Numbered from the whole stretch's first letter, positions 53,696 through 63,669 are shown. The stretch is 63,669 nucleotides of DNA, filler included, from Octopus bimaculoides (GCF_001194135.2; 6 parts of 4 records of this genome joined end to end with filler, not necessarily neighbours in it), one strand, 5' to 3'. The notes: generated by a model not told the origin, from the sequence alone. Translations and numbers: made by a program.

Positions 53696-54063
53696 AGTGG
53701 AAATACACTTCACTTTATCGTGCAGTTACTGTTAATACTTCATTTAGAGAATTAACATTGCTTGTTTTCACTTTTTCGATATCAGTGAAGAATTTCACTG
53801 GAAAAATATACTTAAGGTTGCCAAGAATTTATATCTCTCATCGAAGGTCGGTAGCTATCGGACGCTGACGAAGGGAAATAACCCTGAAACCCGGGTCCGT
53901 TCGTGCTACGATCGCGATGAGAGGAATAACTTCCATTGGCAAAACAAACAGGACACAGTAGTGTGTCGATAAGCCAGCTGGAGGAGATGTCCTCCTGGGG
54001 CTAAAGCAACAGTAACATCCACCCCTAGGGGTCAGCCACACTTAAGTGGTAATACACTTCACT
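53696..54063 (+). mobile_element. Putative retrozyme / Penelope-type non-autonomous retroelement monomer (349-nt period) containing the hammerhead
   Basis: Direct repeat agtgg(a/t)aatacacttcact at 53696-53714 and 54045-54063 (18/19 identical); no long ORF; several internal hairpins. Confidence 0.6.
53835..53923 (+). ncRNA. Type I hammerhead ribozyme, intact core; predicted cleavage after C53897 (GUC)
   Basis: Stem I CGGACG(53859-64)/CGUUCG(53898-903); core CUGACGA(53865-71); stem II AGGG-AAAUAA-CCCU(53872-85); GAAA(53886-89); stem III AC-CCGG-GU; C17 at 53897. Stem I extends via GUAGC/GCUAC and CUCUCAUCG/CGAUGAGAG. Confidence 0.9.
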
Positions 54064-57000
54064 ATATATACATATATATACATATATATACTAATAGAGA
54101 GAGAGAAAGCAACATGAATTCACTATCAAGGGGTTTCGCGCTGATCATTCAATGACAACCCATTTTCTGTGTTTTATTAAAATATAAAAAAATGAAAACC
54201 TCTATGTTCGTTATTCAACCGTTGCATAACGTCCTGAATATTGGCCATATTCCCACACCATATCAACCAGTGAGTGCGTGTGTGCGTGTGAGCCTGTGTT
54301 TCAATATTTTGTTGCAAATCAGAGATCTCACATGCTACATTGAACTGAGACGAACCAGCACATCAATAATGAAGAAGGAGTAGGAGAGACGAGTGAGGGT
54401 TAAAAAGAAAGAAGAGAAAAATTAGATAGAGATATCAGAGAAATAGGCAAGATATAAGAGGGAAATATATTATGGTGAAATGAAGAACACCTAATGTGAA
54501 GCCATTTCATTATTCATGTATATGTGTGCATTAGACTATTGACGTGTTGTTTTTCGGATTTGTAAGAGTTGCTTCTTAAAGTGTCTTTGTGTTTCTGTAA
54601 TACCAATGATCTAGCGTTTAAACAGAGGTCTTCTCTGAGTAAAATTTATTGGGTGTTCTTTTTTCTCTGTAGTACATAACTCATACGTTGCTTTCATTTG
54701 TAGGATTAAGTTTAATGCTGCAATCATAAGCTTTTCTGCCAGCGAATAATTCTTACTTCTTGATAAGCGTTTAAAACGATTTTATGCAATATCAAATATA
54801 TCTTGTTTCTTGAGAGTATTGACGTATTCTCGAAAAGCGCTGTCTTAATGATGGCTGGCAGCATATCCGCTTGTTGCTCTTAGATACCTTATTTATGGTT
54901 GCATTAACAATTTTCTATGTGAATTTATCTTTCGGGCCTCAGTTTAATTTCTTGCCTTTCGAATAATATTTTATTCTATCGAAACGAACATTCCTAACGA
55001 CCACTGAACCACATGGACTCGTTAATAAAAAAATCTATTGAGGACATAACAATATAAATACGAATTCTACTGATTCTGTTTGTTCCCCATGCTTTATATA
55101 TCTTCATATTAACATTAGTTAATTGTAAAATTTAATTCCATTTTATCAAAAATAAATTGGCAAATAAAGAATATACATCTAAAAGAATAATTTATGATTC
55201 CCTTAATACTGTTGCCTTGCGTATTTGTGCTATACTATCGTCACTTTTTACATATTAAGTACGTAAATATAAGGGATAACAATTTTCAGAAATAAAACTT
55301 GAAGCCAAAAGACGCTCACGGATGCCAGGATTTCCAGTTCATGTGAATATTGCATATTTAAAGTAGGTTGACAACTTGAAACATTCTTTCAGAGTAAGTG
55401 CTTCCAAAATATTCTAAAGTTCTTGTGAGTCAAGATAATTATTTTATGGCAGTCAATCGAGAATAATTTGTATTCAGAAACTAAAGATCATCTCCATATC
55501 AGTTGGAAATTCTAAGTGAAATACTTTAAATCATGTCAGACACTAATAATCATTATTAAAATCATTTTAATCAATGTAAGGGATACAATATGAAAATATC
55601 GTAGTTAATAATATACAGAGTATTTAAATACTCCTTAAGTAGTAAACTAAAAATAATGTCCGGTAGATTTATTGGGCATTATCAGTATGACTCCAAACAG
55701 ACTGTGTATCTTAATAGCGACTTATTCAAAGAAGAAGTCTAAACGAATAAGAAAACATTTGTTTCATTACATAATTTGGATACAGCTGGTGTCACATTAG
55801 TTTGATCAAGTTTCACCTCCATAACATTAACTGATAGAAATACTGTGAAATAAACTCACCGATTGCATTTCCATTTAATAGAGTTAGATACCTTACAGTG
55901 ATTTATATGTCAAGACTAAATTTCTTGCATAGTATTAGAACTGTAGAAACGTAATTAATATTTGCTCTACGTTTTCTTTCTCTTGAGCCATATATGCCTA
56001 AATGATGTACGTCCGATGATTAAAGGGTCTATAATTTGTATTTATTCACAGATTCCGAGCTACACCGATGCATTTAAATATCACTAGTGAACTTTATATT
56101 GTCTCTAACAACTATGACGTAGTGCACAGCATTTTCGTCCAACAACACTAAATAATTAATTGTTCTTCACCCGGCTGTACTCACTTCCACAATGCGTTAA
56201 AGCATAATAAAGCATGATCTTGGATTGACGAAAATAAGAGATATAAGCAAAAGTAACTTCATTAAAGGGTTACCGAATTCATCGTCCGAAAGTCCAGTAT
56301 AAACTACACGGACAAAAGTCATGAATACACAGAAAATCTAAAATATATAGAACAAACACATAGAAGCAGTAGATCTAGGAAAATAAACATAATTTATCTA
56401 AACCACTTACTGACTTAATGTAGCATCCAATACAGATAAAATACCCATGAATAAGTTATGAATGTTTCTACGGTAGAAATGAATATTTTAAGCTCATCGA
56501 TAAGAATACTTTATAAAATAGCTACACTTGCGATGATTTCCTCGCAATAAATGCCCTGTCATGTGAAGTTTGTAGAAATGAGGACAATGATGATGGAGAA
56601 TGGTTTCTTACTTAGACACAAAATCCTTCAAATTCGAGATGGGATAGTTGATAGTGTCGATATCAGCACTTAACTGGCATTTTCATTTTATCAATACAAG
56701 ATGGAAGAGAAGCATGTAATTAAAGATAAATCACTGGTTAGTTTTTAAGTGTATAGATTATCAAAACAAACAACTCCCGGTTTCATGTGATTCCAACTTT
56801 ATCCCAAATTTTCAAACATTTCTACAACATCAGATTTCCGTCTACTCCTTCAATGAAGTATCTGCTCACACAGGTTTTGTCAGCCTAGGGCTACACTAAA
56901 AAATACATGCCAAGGTTCTGTGTTGTTGGACGTAGGCCAAGATCATATGGTTGGGATGTCAGCTTTATAACCATATGCCTTTGACTAAACCATTAAAAAT

Positions 57001-57384
57001 TACAATTTTTGTGACGTCAGAAATGTTCATAATTTATCATTGAACATTGACATTTTATCAGTTTTTCGTCAAAACAAGTAAAAGAAAATCTAGGGGCCTA
57101 AGGACGAACAATTCTTCACTATTGGACCATTAAAACAAAATTCATGGTGGAAAAATTAGTGTCCTACCGATTTCATTAATAATTAATATAGTTAAGCTGA
57201 ATGGGAATCTATTCTATTTTCATTGAATGTCACACACTTGTAGTAGAACACCTAGTCCACATAAGACAATATAATTCATGAATTTAATATGAAATAACAG
57301 AAACTTAATTAAAAGCCATTTTTTGTTCTATTTTAAACGAAATTAACATATGCACTTGGAGTGTATGTGTTGGAATGTAACATA

Positions 57385-57435
<51 letters not shown>

Positions 57436-57720
57436 TGTATGAATATATGTATGTATATATATATGTATGTATATATGTATATATGTATGTATGTATTCAT
57501 GTGTGTATGCTACGTTTATATGCTTTCAGTAACTCATAGAATGGCGAACAATCTAAGCCTCACATGATATTAACTCTGTTGCATTTTCAATGAACTTGAC
57601 AATATTTGTGTGTTTTACACTTACATACAAACATGCATGCATACATACATACATACATACATACATCTATCTTATAATGTCACCTGTAACAAAACACATG
57701 TCACTAAAGAATATTACAGC

Positions 57721-57885
57721 CGAGTAAAGAAAATTTGAACCTCGGAACTCTCTGCATTCCATAAAACAGTGGCTCACAGTGTGTTTGCAGTGCCAGTACT
57801 CTTACTACCATTTGGGCTCCTTGATTGGGGGCTTCATGAGATCCGAGCCATTAGGACTGGTAATCTTTTTCAATCACGTAGACTA
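57721..57885 (+). mobile_element. Short R4/Dong-clade fragment
   Basis: RVKKI*TSELSAFHKTVAHSVFAVPVL..FGLLDW; reverse complement matches 23410-23530. Confidence 0.7.
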
Positions 57886-57889
57886 AAGG

Positions 57890-58085
57890 AAAAACTCAAA
57901 TCTAGGAAGCCATATTTGTAACCTCAAGTACAGCGGTATAACACACAGCATTAAGTGGAATATGTTAGAGATATCTAGGGCATACTTCAAAGAAGTTTAG
58001 GCTCTGTATACCTGAAAGAACATACATTTTTATTAAATCGAAAAACTGCACTGACCTACTTAACTCGAGAGTTCAGATATTTACA
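57890..58085 (+). mobile_element. Penelope-like GIY-YIG endonuclease C-terminal remnant
   Basis: LGSHICNLKYSGITHSIKW.ML...LCI.E...I...LLNSR pattern, typical of Penelope EN ends; frameshifted. Confidence 0.55.
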
Positions 58086-58946
58086 AGATGAATGCATTTT
58101 GACAAGATTCTCCTTTTGAACGGGAAGGTGTCACTGTCACTAGATTCGATACACACTTTAAAGATATTCAACTTTTCTCTCATTCGGATATTTCACAAGG
58201 CGTAATGTTTTAAATGAAAACACCGAGTTAAAATTCATTAAAACTTCAAAATTAACCACGCTCTTCATTTAAGGGATAACAGGATATATGCTAGATTCCA
58301 TAAGTAGAATCATCCCAATTCCCTTGGTTAAAGAGTTTTATCGTTTTGCTTTCTTGCATTTTCTGTTTTAGTATTTCATCAGGTTATTTGAGTCTGAACA
58401 ATTGCGGGATCGTGAATGACAAACTATACAAGCATGACCGATTAGTGCAAAATCTGATCATGAAACTTGAAGTAGCTTACGTATAATATAACTCCTTTAT
58501 TCACAAATTTAAATTCATCTCTCAATGAACTGCGTACATTTTTACGATCCTAATAACATCCGAACAGTTCTCTAATATATATAGCAAAATATATATCAAA
58601 ATTGCACACAATTTATACATTTATATATTTTATAAGGTAGAATATTTACATAGACTAACGGCTTCGCGTTTTGTTATTCATGACTAGGAAATTGGTGAAA
58701 ATATTGCAGTTACGTAGTACCTTGAAGGTACATGTTGGTTGCATGAAAGTTTATGCAACCAACATGGACTAAAAACTACTTAGTAGCAATATTTATACCG
58801 ATTTCACAGTCATGACTAGTAAAAAGCGAAGCTGGTGGACTACACAAATATTCTATCTCTTAAAATATATTAAAAATACATGAACTAGGTGCCTATTGCT
58901 TCTTTTGTTATATTTTTCTCACCACATGGGAGAAAATCTATTCAAA

Positions 58947-59002
<56 letters not shown>

Positions 59003-59894
59003 CTCACACACACACACACGCACACACATGTCTATATTAACACACATATATATATATACATACGGACAGAACTACATTACAATTTACTCCTTTATTCTTT
59101 TACTTCTTTCAGTCCAGAGAAGGCGGCCATGCTGGAGCACAGTACCGCCCTGAAGAGTTTTAGTCAAACGAATCGATCCAGGTACTTATTTTTTTAAGCC
59201 TGGAGCTTATTTATCCGGCCCTTTTGCAAAGTTACGGGGACATNNNNNNNNNNNNNNNNNNNNNNNNNNNNNNNNNNNNNNNNNNNNNNNNNNNNNNNNN
59301 NNNNNNNNNNNNNNNNNNNNNNNNNNNNNNNNNNNNNNNNNNNNNNNNNNNNNNNNNNNNNNNNNNNNNNNNNNNNNNNNNNNNNNNNNNNNNNNNNNNN
59401 NNNNNNNNNNNNNNNNNNNNNNNNNNNNNNNNNNNNNNNNNNNNNNNNNNNNNNNNNNNNNNNNNNNNNNNNNNNNNNNNNNNNNNNNNNNNNNNNNNNN
59501 NNNNNNNNNNNNNNNNNNNNNNNNNNNNNNNNNNNNNNNNNNNNNNNNNNNNNNNNNNNNNNNNNNNNNNNNNNNNNNNNNNNNNNNNNNNNNNNNNNNN
59601 NNNNNNNNNNNNNNNNNNNNNNNNNNNNNNNNNNNNNNNNNNNNNNNNNNNNNNNNNNNNNNNNNNNNNNNNNNNNNNNNNNNNNNNNNNNNNNNNNNNN
59701 NNNNNNNNNNNNNNNNNNNNNNNNNNNNNNNNNNNNNNNNNNNNNNNNNNNNNNNNNNNNNNNNNNNNNNNNNNNNNNNNNNNNNNNNNNNNNNNNNNNN
59801 NNNNNNNNNNNNNNNNNNNNNNNNNNNNNNNNNNNNNNNNNNNNNNNNNNNNNNNNNNNNNNNNNNNNNNNNNNNNNNNNNNNNNNNNNNNNNN

Positions 59895-59958
<64 letters not shown>

Positions 59959-61843
59959 CATACATACGTAGAACCAACGGGATTATAGCACTTTTCTAGG
60001 TAGGCAAGGTAAATCATTGAGTCAGGTAAAACTTAATAATTTATTTGTTTTGTTGTGTATTTTTTATAAAGTGGCAGGGTTGATTTGCTTTCACTATTAT
60101 TTCTTGAATCAACATAAATTTTTTTTCTGTTGGACATGGTTCATTTCTTCTAAGGTCTGTTTACTAGCAGCTTGTGCGCAATTAGAGTAGCGCATCGAAT
60201 CGTATTATCCATATCGTTTACGGCTTGTCCCCTTCGTGTGTTTGTCTATTTTTGTATCTGTATACATACCTAAGTGAGTGAGTAAATCTGGATGAGAGTA
60301 GATGTGTGCAAATTGTACCACAAATCTCACTATATGTTTTCGCGACTGTGTGCTTCTCTATTATGGCGTGTTGTTTGTGTTGATGTTTGTGTTTATGTAC
60401 TTGCACATACCTGCGTTTACATCCACACTGTCTTATTATTTAAGTCATACTGTCTCATGAGAATTTTTACAATATATGGACGTGTTGAGATGTAGAACGA
60501 AGTGTTTGAGAGAAAAGACGTACATCAGTAGCTAGATAAGATATGCAAGGTGAGACTAGCAGCATTGATATTGATTCTCCATTTAATATGTATTAAGACT
60601 GATGTCCTCATTTGTAATAACAGATATTTACTATGCAATCCTCTTGAAACGAAGAAACAGCAGATTTAAAAAAATAGAACATTAAAATAAAATGCTACAG
60701 TAAGACAGTTCTTGCTCTGCATTGTTCTTCATCATTAAGAAACATGTGCCACTGGCTCTGATTAATACTCAAGAGTAAAACTGTCAAGCACGTTCGCAAC
60801 AGTGGTCAGTTATTTTCTTATATTTTCTTTTCCTCTTATCCGAAATACGTTATACAAAATTTAATTATCAAATACGTGTCTTTTACACTTATATCACAGT
60901 CTTTATCAACCATTCTTTTGATTCTGAAACTACACGAAAGAGACGTGAACTCAAACACTGTTTAGTTCTATCACAGTCTACAAGGTAATAAACCGTTAAT
61001 AATATATACATGCAATCGATCAGGTGACAAAAAGAAGTATCTTGTCTTAGTAATGACAAAATTAATCATCAACAACTTCGCAATAAAAGAAATATTCTTC
61101 ATTTATTTATTCACTAATCATCTTCATATATATATATATATANNNNNNNNNNNNNNNNNNNNNNNNNNNNNNNNNNNNNNNNNNNNNNNNNNNNNNNNNN
61201 NNNNNNNNNNNNNNNNNNNNNNNNNNNNNNNNNNNNNNNNNNNNNNNNNNNNNNNNNNNNNNNNNNNNNNNNNNNNNNNNNNNNNNNNNNNNNNNNNNNN
61301 NNNNNNNNNNNNNNNNNNNNNNNNNNNNNNNNNNNNNNNNNNNNNNNNNNNNNNNNNNNNNNNNNNNNNNNNNNNNNNNNNNNNNNNNNNNNNNNNNNNN
61401 NNNNNNNNNNNNNNNNNNNNNNNNNNNNNNNNNNNNNNNNNNNNNNNNNNNNNNNNNNNNNNNNNNNNNNNNNNNNNNNNNNNNNNNNNNNNNNNNNNNN
61501 NNNNNNNNNNNNNNNNNNNNNNNNNNNNNNNNNNNNNNNNNNNNNNNNNNNNNNNNNNNNNNNNNNNNNNNNNNNNNNNNNNNNNNNNNNNNNNNNNNNN
61601 NNNNNNNNNNNNNNNNNNNNNNNNNNNNNNNNNNNNNNNNNNNNNNNNNNNNNNNNNNNNNNNNNNNNNNNNNNNNNNNNNNNNNNNNNNNNNNNNNNNN
61701 NNNNNNNNNNNNNNNNNNNNNNNNNNNNNNNNNNNNNNNNNNNNNNNNNNNNNNNNNNNNNNNNNNNNNNNNNNNNNNNNNNNNNNNNNNNNNNNNNNNN
61801 NNNNNNNNNNNNNNNNNNNNNNNNNNNNNNNNNNNNTATATAA

Positions 61844-61885
<42 letters not shown>

Positions 61886-63614
61886 GGGGAGCGAGGGAGA
61901 GAGAGAGGGAGAGGGAGGGAGAGAGAGAGGGAGAGCGAGGGAGAGAGAGAGAGGGAGGGAGAGATACATATGTATGTATGTATGTGTGTATGTGTACTAA
62001 CGCATGCAGGCGATCTTAAAGATGAAGCATTTGCAATGGACCTTCAATATGGTGATTAATTACGGCATGATTTTGTGCTTCCGTACTTGTGTATGTGTAT
62101 GTGTGTGTGTGTGTGTGTGTGCGTAGGCGTGTGCGTGTGTGTATGTTATTCTTCCGTTACTTTCCTTCCTATTCATGGAATTGTTTTGTTCTTCCTTTAG
62201 TTTTCCATGTTCTTTTCTTTACAATTCCTTCTTTTCATCTCTTTACATGTAGTCATTTAATATTGGATTTTATTCAACCATTACAATAAGCCATATTCTC
62301 TTTCGTTCTCATCTGTATTCTCATCATTTCATTTATAATCAGTTCGTTTAGCGTAAGTAAATTATGTTAAAATTTTCCTCTGTCTACTATCATTCCTCCG
62401 GTTTTCCACTATAAAATAGAAAAGAGGTCACGCAGCAAATAATTTATTTTATAAGTGTATTCAAAATACTTCAGTTGCTTACACCTAAGTACGATTTGAC
62501 TAAAAATAACCTTTGATAAAAGGAGGTCTTTTCGTACATCACGGACAACGCTGACAATTGTTTACTTCCTTTTTCATGACCATGGGATCAGACAAAGATT
62601 TGGTTCGACTGACCACTGAAATGTTCCATTCTGCCAACGATGTAAACATTGCCTTCATTCTTGCTGATACTTAATGTATAAGTAATTACAACTATTATCA
62701 TTCTATCGTTTTCTAATAGGGACAATATTTTCGAATGTCTTGTTTTTTTCTTTAAGAGTGTAACCTACGTAATTTAAGGGACATTATGCTGATATTGTTA
62801 TCTGGTATATCTAAAAGTAATGACTCAATCGTTTGATGCCACATACATATATTATATGATATCAGAAATGACCGAAACTATATCTAAAGGAAGAACACCG
62901 ATATGCCAGTAAGTAATCTATTTCACATATTTTATTCATATTTGAGAACCTTACCACTCACTTGACATATTCTCTTTTGAAACGTACGTAAAGATCTCAG
63001 CGTGTCTTCCACACCCAACAAGTTTTACTTCACAGATCTGCTCTAACTATTTTCAAAAGACTCTTTGCCTGCACCGAACAATTCTTTTACTCTTCTCTTA
63101 TCCTCCGCCACACGCTTTATATACATTGAGTTTTCTACCTGAACGTTATCTTGCACCGTCTTCGAATTCGCATTTTATCTAGTGCATATTCCCAGATTGA
63201 GTAATATTTCGGGGAAACGTAGTCACTTAATTTATCATATATTAATAAACGGGTGCAAATTTTGTAGCAATACTATGTAACTTCAAGGATTCCATAAAAA
63301 GGTAAAGGCAGAAATCATGGATAAAGACGAGAGGTTTTTTCTCTGTTGCTTGCGTTTGATATTGTTGTAAGTAAAATTCGAACCAACAGGCTTTAATTGC
63401 ACGTATCACAAAAAATAGCTGTTCACGAAACGACTTACAAAACGCTTCGAAGATATCAGTAGCAGAATTTTCAAGCGACACACAAAATGTATGCAAGTTG
63501 TCCATTTTTGCAAAAATTGCAAACCCGAATCTAGGGGACATGTACATATGCATACGTAAATACAAACACACACAAGCACGCACTTACATATACATATATA
63601 TGTATGTATTTATT

Positions 63615-63669
<55 letters not shown>

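What the first reader, a model, noticed from the sequence alone, without database searches (positions are those of the whole stretch)
53696..54063. 349-nt structured unit around the ribozyme: candidate retrozyme (circRNA-forming mobile element)
Seen: the scaffold starts with agtggaaatacacttcact and the same 19-mer (one mismatch) recurs exactly 349 nt later, then stops at an (AT)-rich tract. The unit has no meaningful ORF but several hairpins or palindromes: cagtgaa/ttcactg 53783-53800, gacac/gtgtc 53952-53967, ggagga/tcctcc 53980-53995, cccctagggg 54022-54031, cacttaagtg 54039-54048. Established: metazoan non-LTR retrozymes are tandem repeats of a few hundred nt with one type I hammerhead per monomer, processed to circular RNAs and thought to be mobilised by Penelope-like elements; similar-sized monomers are reported in mussels. 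Inference: this is the last monomer of an array that broke the assembly at the scaffold start. Penelope endonuclease remnants at 57890-58085 and 36830-37110 show candidate helper elements exist in this genome. Alternative: the 19-mer is a target-site duplication of a solo insertion.
Basis: partly seen in the sequence, partly recalled or inferred. Interest (0 to 1): 0.85.

Follow-up and report, generated by a model that had tools for sequence, protein, structure and literature searches.

The report
Hammerhead-ribozyme retrozyme monomer at scaffold edge
This is one 349-base copy of a small non-coding mobile repeat carrying a self-cleaving hammerhead ribozyme, a known kind of element (animal retrozyme) not yet reported from cephalopods in the papers I could search; whether this copy sits in a tandem array or makes circular RNA could not be tested here.

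Summary
The 19-mer at 53696-53714 recurs 349 nt later with one mismatch (0 expected by chance), and the repeat ends directly against a (TATATATACA)n tract.

The unit contains a complete type I hammerhead at 53859-53903, cleaving at 53897/53898. Rfam does not report it. However, a covariance model built only from four experimentally validated retrozyme ribozymes (coral, mussel, two axolotl) finds it at 22.1 bits, E = 7.5e-5. The best score in 80 kb of control DNA was 12.7 bits. An explicit descriptor gave 0 hits in 20 Mb of random sequence.

Other retrozyme features are met:
- The unit has no coding capacity and is 43% GC.
- It folds much better than shuffles (z = -5.1), with helix I extended into a long rod.
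- Two ribozyme copies are predicted to form a double hammerhead through the CCCGGG palindrome.

Not shown:
- Tandem arrangement: only 1.05 units are visible, and the left repeat is cut by the piece edge.
- Copy number, RNA expression and circles.
- The claimed Penelope endonuclease remnant at 57890-58085, which gets no Pfam support.
- The organism.

Verdict: a probable non-LTR retrozyme copy, a new member of a known kind, of moderate interest.

The parts
53696..54044 (+). One full 349-nt repeat unit (monomer) in genomic register. It is non-coding and 43% GC.
   Evidence: The period is defined by the 19-mer repeat. GC content and fold z = -4.9 (linear) and -5.5 (circular) come; a repeat run gave z = -5.1, against -1.6 to +2.2 for nine neighbouring 349-nt windows. 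There is no ORF above 67 codons.
53696..53714 (+). Left copy of the 19-mer, at the start of the unit. It is cut by the piece edge, so it may extend upstream.
   Evidence: Together with 54044 it forms a 7-bp hairpin (AAGUGGA / UUCACUU, loop AAUACAC) with pair probability about 0.75.
54045..54063 (+). Right copy of the 19-mer, the first 19 nt of a further unit. It has one mismatch at 54050. The element's 3' end is at 54063.
   Evidence: The sequence diverges from the unit after 54063.
53859..53903 (+). Type I hammerhead ribozyme:
- helix I 5' strand CGGACG, 53859-53864
- core CUGACGA, 53865-53871
- helix II AGGG/CCCU with loop AAAUAA, 53872-53885
- GAAA, 53886-53889
- helix III palindrome CCCGGG, 53890-53895
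- U16.1 and C17, 53896-53897
- predicted cleavage between 53897 and 53898
- helix I 3' strand CGUUCG, 53898-53903
   Evidence: The descriptor scan finds this as the only hit in the piece and gives 0 hits in 20 Mb of random sequence. Model R1, built from four validated retrozyme hammerheads, scores it 22.1 bits, E = 7.5e-5, full length with no mispairs. The best control score is 12.7 bits. Rfam is negative.
53818..53864 (+). 5' arm of the long rod that continues hammerhead helix I.
   Evidence: It pairs with 53898-53942: 39 bp in the linear MFE and 35 bp in the circular MFE. The central 10-bp block has pair probability 0.9-1.0.
53898..53942 (+). 3' arm of the same rod. It begins at the nucleotide that becomes the 5' end after cleavage.
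53783..53800 (+). Hairpin CAGUGAA / UUCACUG.
   Evidence: Present in the MFE as 7 bp.
53952..53967 (+). Hairpin GACACA / UGUGUC.
   Evidence: Present in the MFE as 6 bp.
53980..53995 (+). Hairpin GGAGGA / UCCUCC.
   Evidence: Present in the MFE as 6 bp.
54021..54032 (+). Hairpin over the palindrome CCCCTAGGGG.
   Evidence: Present in the MFE as 4 bp. It is a perfect 10-nt palindrome.
54039..54048 (.). Perfect 10-nt palindrome CACTTAAGTG spanning the boundary between the unit's end and the 19-mer.
   Evidence: The background rate is about 1e-3 per position, which argues that the 19-mer is part of the unit and not duplicated target DNA.
54064..54091 (.). AT-rich microsatellite (TATATATACA)n directly abutting the element's 3' end. 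It is the probable insertion target.
   Evidence: TRF places it at 54063-54091, 2.9 copies, 100% match. Only 0.9% of positions in the piece are followed by such a tract.

Best explanation
The 368 bases are the 3'-terminal monomer, plus the first 19 nt of a further monomer, of a head-to-tail insertion of a non-autonomous, non-LTR retrozyme whose RNA sense is the + strand.

Shown from the sequence:
- a complete canonical type I hammerhead
- a 349-nt period with no coding capacity
- an unusually stable branched-rod fold that grows out of hammerhead helix I
- a self-complementary helix III (ACCCGGGU) that lets two copies pair into a double hammerhead
- a 3' end that falls immediately after a small hairpin with an AC-rich loop and abuts AT-rich microsatellite DNA

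Inferred by analogy with the coral, mussel and axolotl elements (PMC7229834) and the anole Penelope-like enzyme (PMC11167929):
1. Arrays are transcribed as multimers.
2. Each ribozyme cuts between 53897 and 53898, most efficiently as a dimer in multimeric transcripts. [quoted passage not shown]
3. A host RtcB-type tRNA ligase closes these RNAs into circles.
4. A Penelope-like element's reverse transcriptase/endonuclease nicks AT-rich DNA, starts cDNA synthesis internally at the hairpin, and runs more than once round the template. This gives head-to-tail copies whose last unit is partial.

This particular locus shows only one ribozyme. It can release a unit-length RNA only if at least one more unit lies upstream of the piece edge.
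For: - 19-mer repeat at exactly 349 nt, 0 expected by chance.
- Hammerhead descriptor: a single hit in the piece with helix I of 6 bp and helix II of 4 bp; 0 hits in 20 Mb of composition-matched random sequence.
- Model R1 was built only from validated retrozyme ribozymes (sequences from the supplement of PMC7229834; alignment; model). It finds 53859-53903 at 22.1 bits, E = 7.5e-5, with all 12 pairs standard and helices I and II different in sequence from the training set.
- In 80 kb of control loci containing 11 chance core matches, the best score is 12.7 bits.
- The architecture matches the published definition of the canonical metazoan hammerhead: helix I 6 bp, helix II 4 bp, helix III 1-2 bp with a small palindromic loop (PMC4209133). 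That type is associated with retrozymes rather than with autonomous PLEs (legend of Suppl. Fig. S1).
- Fold z = -5.1, against -1.1 to -3.8 for the four validated retrozymes and -1.6 to +2.2 for neighbouring DNA.
- The dimer MFE (-58.7, against 2 x -26.6) adopts the double hammerhead. The helix III self-duplex is -14.9 kcal/mol; mussel's is -13.3.
- The unit size of 349 lies within the 170-400 nt class, next to mussel's 350-390. GC is 43%, below 50%.
- The 3' junction is a hairpin followed by AT-rich DNA. This parallels the Penelope-like mechanism of an AT-rich nick with an internal start in an AC-rich stem-loop.
- The left repeat is cut by the piece edge, and a 10-nt palindrome spans the unit/19-mer boundary. 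Both fit a continuing array better than a target-site duplication.
Against: - Only 1.05 units and one ribozyme are visible, so tandem arrangement is not demonstrated.
- Rfam reports no hammerhead at three search scales, even at E<=10. I could not run a positive control for that.
- No second copy exists in the piece.
- No copy was found in metagenome, viral or prokaryote collections, nor through ORF-based look-ups. No eukaryotic genome collection was available, so copy number is unknown.
- The 10.1-11.1 pair is A-U rather than the usually conserved G-C (PMC4209133), which may lower activity. One validated axolotl ribozyme has a U-U mismatch there and still cleaves.
- No helper remnant is detectable in the piece.
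- Cleavage, transcription and circles are untested.
- The organism is unverified.
Confidence: 0.7

Rival explanations
1. This is a solitary insertion of one cDNA copy, a 330-bp element at 53715-54044, flanked by a 19-bp target-site duplication. There is no array upstream, and the locus yields at most a once-cut transcript and no circle.
For: - Metazoan retrozymes can have target-site duplications larger than 4 bp.
- Monomeric copies are common in many families.
- Only one ribozyme is seen.
- The two 19-mers differ at one base, as old duplications often do.
Against: - It needs the piece to start exactly at the first base of the duplication.
- A perfect 10-nt palindrome spans the supposed element/target junction at 54039-54048; the chance is about 1% given a background of 1e-3 per position and 9 spanning registers.
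- The 19-mer plus base 54044 forms a hairpin integrated in the unit's fold.
- The assembly broke here, which suggests repeated rather than unique DNA upstream (inference).
Confidence: 0.15
2. The sequence is the terminal repeat (pseudo-LTR) of a 5'-truncated or upstream-lying autonomous Penelope-like element, not an independent retrozyme.
For: - Penelope-like elements carry type I hammerheads in their terminal repeats.
- They are usually 5'-truncated, leaving a single terminal repeat.
- They insert in AT-rich or microsatellite DNA.
- Retrozymes are phylogenetically close to such repeats.
- The sequence upstream of the piece is unknown.
Against: - A 349-nt period cannot contain a >3-kb element body. 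A single truncated copy would not repeat its own first 19 nt.
- The ribozyme is the canonical type (helix I 6 bp, helix II 4 bp). It is not the minimal type reported in metazoan PLEs, which has helix II of 6-8 bp, helix I of 4-5 bp and an extra unpaired base.
- No RT or GIY-YIG signal is present anywhere in the piece.
Confidence: 0.08
3. This is a decayed or fortuitous hammerhead-like motif in ordinary repetitive DNA, with no catalytic activity and no RNA life cycle.
For: - Rfam is silent.
- The 10.1-11.1 pair is A-U.
- The monomeric helix III is unstable at +2.9 kcal/mol.
- In the circular fold the nearest-neighbour model prefers an alternative pairing, and the active fold costs 7.6 kcal/mol.
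- The first-stage scan looked at many windows, so rare chance motifs can surface.
Against: - The chance rate is below 1 per 20 Mb for the descriptor.
- R1 gives E = 7.5e-5 with all helices intact and no core substitution.
- The motif sits exactly where a long rod (z about -5) closes helix I, inside a 349-nt periodic unit.
- The validated mussel ribozyme has the same helix III design.
Confidence: 0.05

Closest known systems
Mytilus galloprovincialis non-LTR retrozyme (Rtz Mg353; Cervera & de la Pena 2020, PMC7229834)
   Same: - Mollusc-type unit size: 350-390 bp there, 349 here.
- AT-rich and non-coding.
- One type I hammerhead per unit, with helix I of 6 bp and helix II of 4 bp.
- A 6-nt palindrome in helix III: CGCGCG there, CCCGGG here.
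- Helix III self-duplex of similar strength: -13.3 against -14.9 kcal/mol.
   Different: - No detectable sequence homology outside the catalytic core (local alignment z = 2.8, below the best shuffle).
- All helix sequences differ.
- The 10.1-11.1 pair is A-U here and G-C in mussel.
- The predicted fold is much stronger here: z = -5.1 against -1.1.
- Tandem arrays, self-cleavage and abundant circular RNA are demonstrated for mussel and untested here.
Newt satellite 2 / axolotl retrozymes Rtz331 and Rtz353
   Same: Units of about 330-350 nt with a type I hammerhead. Its short palindromic helix III makes it work best as a dimer in multimeric transcripts. RNAs are circularised by a tRNA ligase.
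   Different: These are vertebrate elements with 51-58% GC and unrelated sequence. They reach up to about 120,000 copies. Copy number and dimer dependence here are only predicted.
Pseudo-LTR hammerheads of Penelope-like elements (Cervera & de la Pena 2014; Frangieh et al. 2024)
   Same: - A type I hammerhead with palindromic helix III positions.
- Head-to-tail or partial-tandem copies.
- Insertion next to AT-rich or microsatellite DNA.
- An element 3' end at an internal stem-loop rather than at a tail homologous to the target.
   Different: - The ribozyme here is the canonical type, not the minimal type.
- The unit is 349 nt with no RT-endonuclease ORF.
- No PLE protein remnant is detectable in the piece.
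Schistosoma Sm-alpha SINE-like hammerhead repeats (from my own knowledge, not checked here)
   Same: A non-coding repeat of about 330 nt with an active type I hammerhead, found both dispersed and in tandem.
   Different: Sm-alpha is described as carrying a tRNA-like Pol III promoter. No tRNA-like sequence is found here.
Plant LTR retrozymes (Cervera et al. 2016, PMC4918200)
   Same: Non-autonomous retroelements that propagate through hammerhead-processed circular RNA.
   Different: The plant elements have type III hammerheads inside about 350-bp LTRs, a primer binding site and polypurine tract, 4-bp target-site duplications and 600-1000-nt circles. None of these applies here.

Membership tests
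Metazoan non-LTR retrozyme | Type I hammerhead with intact catalytic core (CUGANGA / GAAA / UH) | tested here: met
   CUGACGA is at 53865-71, GAAA at 53886-89 and UC at 53896-97. The descriptor hit is unique in the piece, with 0 hits in 20 Mb of random sequence. R1 scores it 22.1 bits, E = 7.5e-5, against a control maximum of 12.7 bits.
Metazoan non-LTR retrozyme | Canonical architecture: helix I about 6 bp, helix II about 4 bp, helix III 1-2 bp capped by a small palindromic loop (PMC4209133) | tested here: met
   Helix I is 6 bp and helix II is 4 bp. Helix III is A-U plus C-G with CCGG, within the palindrome CCCGGG.
Metazoan non-LTR retrozyme | Conserved G10.1-C11.1 pair and loop 1 / loop 2 tertiary contacts | tested here: not met
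   The 10.1-11.1 pair is A-U. Loop contacts could not be evaluated. The mussel family also lacks most of the conserved loop nucleotides, and axolotl Amex2 has U-U at this pair, so this feature is not strictly defining.
Metazoan non-LTR retrozyme | Unit of about 150-450 bp, GC below 50%, no ORF, no LTR/PBS/PPT | tested here: met
   The unit is 349 nt and 43% GC. The longest ORF is 67 codons and has no homologue.
Metazoan non-LTR retrozyme | Head-to-tail tandem copies, each with a ribozyme | tested here: inconclusive
   Only 1.05 units and one ribozyme are visible. The left repeat is cut by the piece edge. No other copy was retrievable.
Metazoan non-LTR retrozyme | Highly self-paired monomer or circular RNA | tested here: met
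   The circular MFE is -108.7 kcal/mol with z = -5.1 to -5.5, stronger than the four validated retrozymes and the neighbouring DNA.
Metazoan non-LTR retrozyme | Self-cleavage and accumulation of unit-length linear and circular RNA | not testable with these tools
   This needs in vitro transcription, northern blots, RNase R treatment or RNA-seq.
Metazoan non-LTR retrozyme | Co-occurrence with Penelope-like elements in the same genome | tested here: inconclusive
   No RT or GIY-YIG signal is found in the piece. Published octopus annotations list active Penelope families, but the organism of this piece is unverified.
Penelope-like element pseudo-LTR (minimal hammerhead) | Minimal hammerhead: helix II 6-8 bp, helix I 4-5 bp, an unpaired base between positions 9 and 10.1, helix III absent or 1 bp | tested here: not met
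   Helix II is 4 bp, helix I is 6 bp and continues into a rod, and there is no extra base after A9.
Penelope-like element pseudo-LTR (minimal hammerhead) | Flanks an RT / GIY-YIG ORF | tested here: inconclusive
   No such ORF lies downstream. The upstream sequence is outside the piece. The 349-nt period excludes an ORF between the two 19-mers.
Rfam hammerhead families (e.g. type I, RF00163) | Score at or above the family's gathering threshold | tested here: not met
   No hammerhead family is reported at E<=1 over 10 kb, or at E<=10 over 415 nt and 86 nt. A positive control with validated retrozyme ribozymes could not be run.
tRNA-derived SINE with hammerhead (Sm-alpha type) | tRNA-like Pol III promoter region | tested here: not met
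   ARAGORN finds no tRNA-like sequence in the piece. This is a weak test for a degenerate SINE head.

The most novel reading that the evidence does not exclude
The element's 3' end carries the mark of how retrozymes borrow the Penelope-like machinery. Reverse transcription would start at a dedicated small hairpin (AAGUGG(A/U)-AAUACAC-UUCACUU) on a circular or multimeric template, after a nick in AT-rich microsatellite DNA. Every independent insertion of the family would then end at ...CACTTCACT next to AT-rich DNA and be longer than a whole number of units. If so, this family would give the first sequence-level evidence for the retrozyme-PLE partnership, which the literature so far supports only by co-occurrence and phylogeny. 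It would do so in cephalopods, where retrozymes are undescribed. The predicted rise in the cost of the active ribozyme fold, from 0.9 kcal/mol in the linear form to 7.6 in the circle, would additionally act as a built-in switch protecting the circle.
Probability: 0.2. Interest if true: 0.6.

Novelty: new member of a known kind. Interest (0 to 1): 0.38.

Why it matters
Retrozymes are a natural, ribozyme-driven route to abundant small circular RNAs in animals, and in mussels and corals these circles are highly abundant. I found no report of them in cephalopods: searches combining hammerhead or retrozyme with octopus or cephalopod returned no such report, and the two octopus/cephalopod repeat-annotation papers I searched do not mention ribozymes.

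If this family is tandem and expressed, it would have three consequences:
- It would add an unannotated class of repeat and of circular RNA to cephalopod genomes and transcriptomes.
- It would extend the retrozyme/Penelope co-distribution within molluscs.
- Its clean 3' junction gives a concrete, checkable prediction about where and how the helper reverse transcriptase starts.

As a single partial locus, however, it adds an example to a known class and not a new principle.

Tried and rejected
1. Rfam at three scales gave no hammerhead. The weak miRNA-family hits are microsatellite artefacts.
2. Protein-handle route to other copies. The 67-codon minus-strand ORF had no homologue in the 5.8-billion-cluster search. 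Exact-product look-ups for three window ORFs (53838-54041-, 54192-54383+, 63242-63583-) found nothing on record.
3. DNA pattern scans:
   - The ribozyme pattern found nothing in metagenome or viral contigs.
   - The 3'-hairpin pattern found nothing in metagenomes.
   - A looser ribozyme pattern in prokaryote genomes gave 11 hits. That is about the number I calculate for chance, and all scored 8 bits or less at the pattern sites with R1. I rejected them as noise.
4. Homology of the unit body to validated mussel and coral retrozymes was not significant.
5. A second copy or further ribozyme in the piece: none found. The R1 hit at 59147-59183 (11.1 bits) has GAAU in place of GAAA and was rejected.
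6. The Penelope endonuclease remnant at 57890-58085 got no Pfam hit in six frames at E<=10. The ten longest stop-free segments of the piece gave only a sub-threshold Imm43 match.
7. tRNA-like SINE head: none found.
8. I considered spending the remaining large protein searches on the 74-codon plus-strand frame or the putative endonuclease fragment. I decided against it. The frame has no start codon, and a 40-residue degenerate fragment could not reach significance against 1.8 billion sequences.

Full report
**Scope.** Only the piece 53696-63669 is real sequence. It contains two N gaps (59244-59894 and 61143-61836) and ends inside an (AT)41 tract. It therefore looks like a short-read scaffold whose ends sit on repeats.

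**1. The observation.**
- AGTGGAAATACACTTCACT occupies 53696-53714 and recurs at 54045-54063 with one mismatch at 54050, exactly 349 nt later. Allowing three mismatches there are 2 matches against 0.00 expected.
- After 54063 the sequence stops following the unit and becomes (TATATATACA)2.9. Only 0.9% of positions in this piece are followed by a tract of that kind.
- The left copy begins at the first base of the piece, so the repeat is censored there. Its 19-nt length is a minimum.
- All five listed hairpins or palindromes exist.
- The longest ORF in the unit is 67 codons on the minus strand, and the longest stop-free frame a tandem array would offer is 74 codons. The 67-codon ORF has no homologue.

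**2. Is there really a ribozyme?** Rfam reports no hammerhead family over 10 kb at E<=1, nor over 415 nt or 86 nt at E<=10. That counts against the claim, so I tested it independently in two ways.

Descriptor test. I wrote an explicit descriptor: CUGANGA, a helix II hairpin, GAAA, a short helix III closed by A-U, UH, and helix I.
- It finds one site in the piece, on the + strand. Helix I is 6 bp (CGGACG/CGUUCG), helix II is 4 bp (AGGG/CCCU, loop AAAUAA) and helix III is CCCGGG, with cleavage before 53898.
- At that stringency it finds none in 20 Mb of composition-matched random sequence.

Covariance model test.
- The supplement of Cervera & de la Pena 2020 gives four retrozyme constructs whose self-cleavage was shown experimentally: coral, mussel and two axolotl families.
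- I aligned only their ribozymes and built model R1 with the hammerhead structure, then searched the piece with filters off.
- The top hit is 53859-53903 at 22.1 bits, E = 7.5e-5. It is full length, has no non-standard pair, and has helix I and II sequences unlike any training sequence.
- The runner-up (11.1 bits, 59147-59183) has GAAU instead of GAAA.
- As a negative control I used 80 kb of prokaryote loci that contain, by construction, 11 chance matches to the core plus CCCGGGTCCG. The best score there is 12.7 bits, and the pattern sites themselves reach at most about 8 bits.

The motif therefore has the helices and not only the core.

It matches the published definition of the canonical metazoan type I hammerhead: helix I 6 bp, helix II 4 bp, helix III 1-2 bp capped by a small palindromic loop (PMC4209133). 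That paper and the 2020 supplement associate this type with retrozymes, and the 'minimal' variants with autonomous Penelope-like elements. One departure is that the 10.1-11.1 pair is A-U and not the usual G-C.

**3. The unit as an RNA.**
- In cleavage register the 349-nt RNA folds at -110.5 kcal/mol (z = -4.9). As a circle it folds at -108.7 (z = -5.5).
- A second run gave z = -5.1. The four validated retrozymes gave -1.1 to -3.8, and nine neighbouring 349-nt windows gave -1.6 to +2.2.
- Hammerhead helix I continues into a rod of 35-39 bp (53898-53942 with 53818-53864).
- The 19-mer, together with base 54044, forms a 7-bp hairpin with loop AAUACAC at probability about 0.75.

**4. Monomer or dimer?**
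- The monomeric helix III hairpin is unfavourable at +2.9 kcal/mol, whereas ACCCGGGU self-pairs at -14.9.
- The predicted MFE of two ribozyme segments (-58.7, against 2 x -26.6) is the double hammerhead, with an 8-bp shared helix III.
- The validated mussel ribozyme has the same design (ACGCGCGU, -13.3) and cleaves at about 0.1 per min as a monomer. The axolotl ribozymes need dimers.
- I therefore expect modest monomeric activity and better dimeric activity. This is inference.
- In the nearest-neighbour model the active fold costs 0.9 kcal/mol in the linear monomer but 7.6 in the circle, where GAC 53861-63 pairs with GUC 53895-97. This could protect the circle, or it could merely reflect the model's multiloop penalty.

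**5. Array, solo copy or PLE end?**
- The piece holds no second copy, and only one ribozyme is visible. As seen, the locus could be cut once but could not release a unit.
- Three points favour more sequence of the same kind upstream:
  - The repeat is censored by the edge. A true 19-bp target-site duplication would need the piece to start exactly at its first base.
  - A perfect 10-nt palindrome, CACTTAAGTG (54039-54048), spans the junction between the unit's end and the 19-mer. The background is about 1e-3 per position, so about 1% for any register spanning a given bond.
  - Short-read assemblies stop at repeats (inference).
- A terminal repeat of a truncated Penelope-like element does not fit. 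The 349-nt period excludes an ORF, and the ribozyme is of the canonical type.
- I put the array (or insertion of more than one unit) reading at about 0.7, the solo insertion with duplication at 0.15, a PLE end at 0.08, and a dead or chance motif at 0.05.

**6. Mobilisation.**
- The literature proposes that circles or multimers are copied by a Penelope-like reverse transcriptase into tandem cDNA.
- For the anole element, the enzyme nicks AT-rich DNA and starts reverse transcription internally at an AC-rich stem-loop with no homology to the target.
- Penelope-like elements also show a bias for (TA)n and other microsatellites.
- The junction here has that shape: a hairpin with loop AAUACAC, then AT-rich microsatellite. 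This is a parallel and not a demonstration. A microsatellite 3' tail of another retroelement type is not excluded.

**7. Helper elements.**
There is no Pfam match in six frames at E<=10.
- There is no transposon domain in the ten longest stop-free segments of the piece.
- By eye, frame +2 reads S-TAV-*-H ... GH ... RLCIPERTYI, which faintly recalls the C-terminal half of such endonucleases. That rests on memory only.
- Independent literature does list 30 recently active Penelope families in Octopus vulgaris (PMC13282606) and Penelope among abundant coleoid repeats (PMC8967140).

**8. Other copies.**
- No eukaryotic genome collection was available.
- Pattern scans of metagenome and viral contigs found nothing. 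ORF-based look-ups also found nothing.
- Copy number, tandem organisation and expression remain open.

**9. Comparison and novelty.**
- The closest known relative in kind is the mussel retrozyme. It has the same size class, the same ribozyme design and the same phylum, but no sequence homology outside the core. That is as expected, since these families are described as species-specific.
- Searches for hammerhead or retrozyme with octopus or cephalopod found no report of such elements, and the octopus repeat papers do not mention ribozymes.
- I rate it a new member of a known kind. Interest is moderate (0.38) because the class and mechanism are established and this single partial locus cannot show tandem structure or RNA.
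- The most novel reading not excluded is that the 3' hairpin is the retrozyme's dedicated start site for a Penelope-like reverse transcriptase (probability about 0.2).

Noticed in passing
58620-58873: A near-perfect foldback of about 250 nt: arms of 99 nt, 76% complementary by the repeat finder. The RNA MFE is -110.6 kcal/mol with z = -13.5. It is a candidate MITE or foldback element. The weak sub-threshold Rfam mir-95 and R2-element hits here probably just reflect the hairpin.
   Followed up: partly
59100-59243: A SINE-like fragment running into the N gap. It contains a degenerate hammerhead-like string, CUGAAGA-GUUU-UAGUC-AAAC-GAAUC (59150-59178), which scores 11.1 bits and E = 0.13 with R1. 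It has GAAU instead of GAAA, so the core is not intact.
   Followed up: partly
59244-59894 and 61143-61836: Two assembly gaps of 651 and 694 N, each bordered by microsatellites: (TG)30 at 59895-59955, (AT)n before 61143, and an (AG)-rich array at 61844-61964.
   Followed up: no
63588-63669: The piece ends inside an (AT)41 microsatellite. Both ends of the piece therefore lie on repeats, as expected for a short-read scaffold that could not be extended.
   Followed up: no
57386-57522 and 58946-59028: Compound (TG)n/(TATG)n and (AC)n microsatellites lie in inverted orientation about 1.45 kb apart and dominate the list of inverted repeats. This may be coincidental in a microsatellite-rich genome.
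   Followed up: no
57926-58085: Frame +2, with two stops, reads S-TAV-*-H ... GH ... RLCIPERTYI. From memory only, this faintly resembles the C-terminal half of a Penelope-like GIY-YIG endonuclease. Pfam finds nothing at E<=10.
   Followed up: partly
63245-63583 (minus strand): The longest stop-free frame in the piece (113 codons) gives only a sub-threshold Pfam match to Imm43 (20 bits, cut-off 25). No identical gene product is on record. It is probably non-coding.
   Followed up: partly
53861-53867 with 53892-53897: In the circular fold, an alternative pairing (GAC/GUC and CUG/CGG) covers the cleavage site and part of the catalytic core. It raises the cost of the active ribozyme fold from 0.9 kcal/mol (linear) to 7.6 (circle).
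   Followed up: partly
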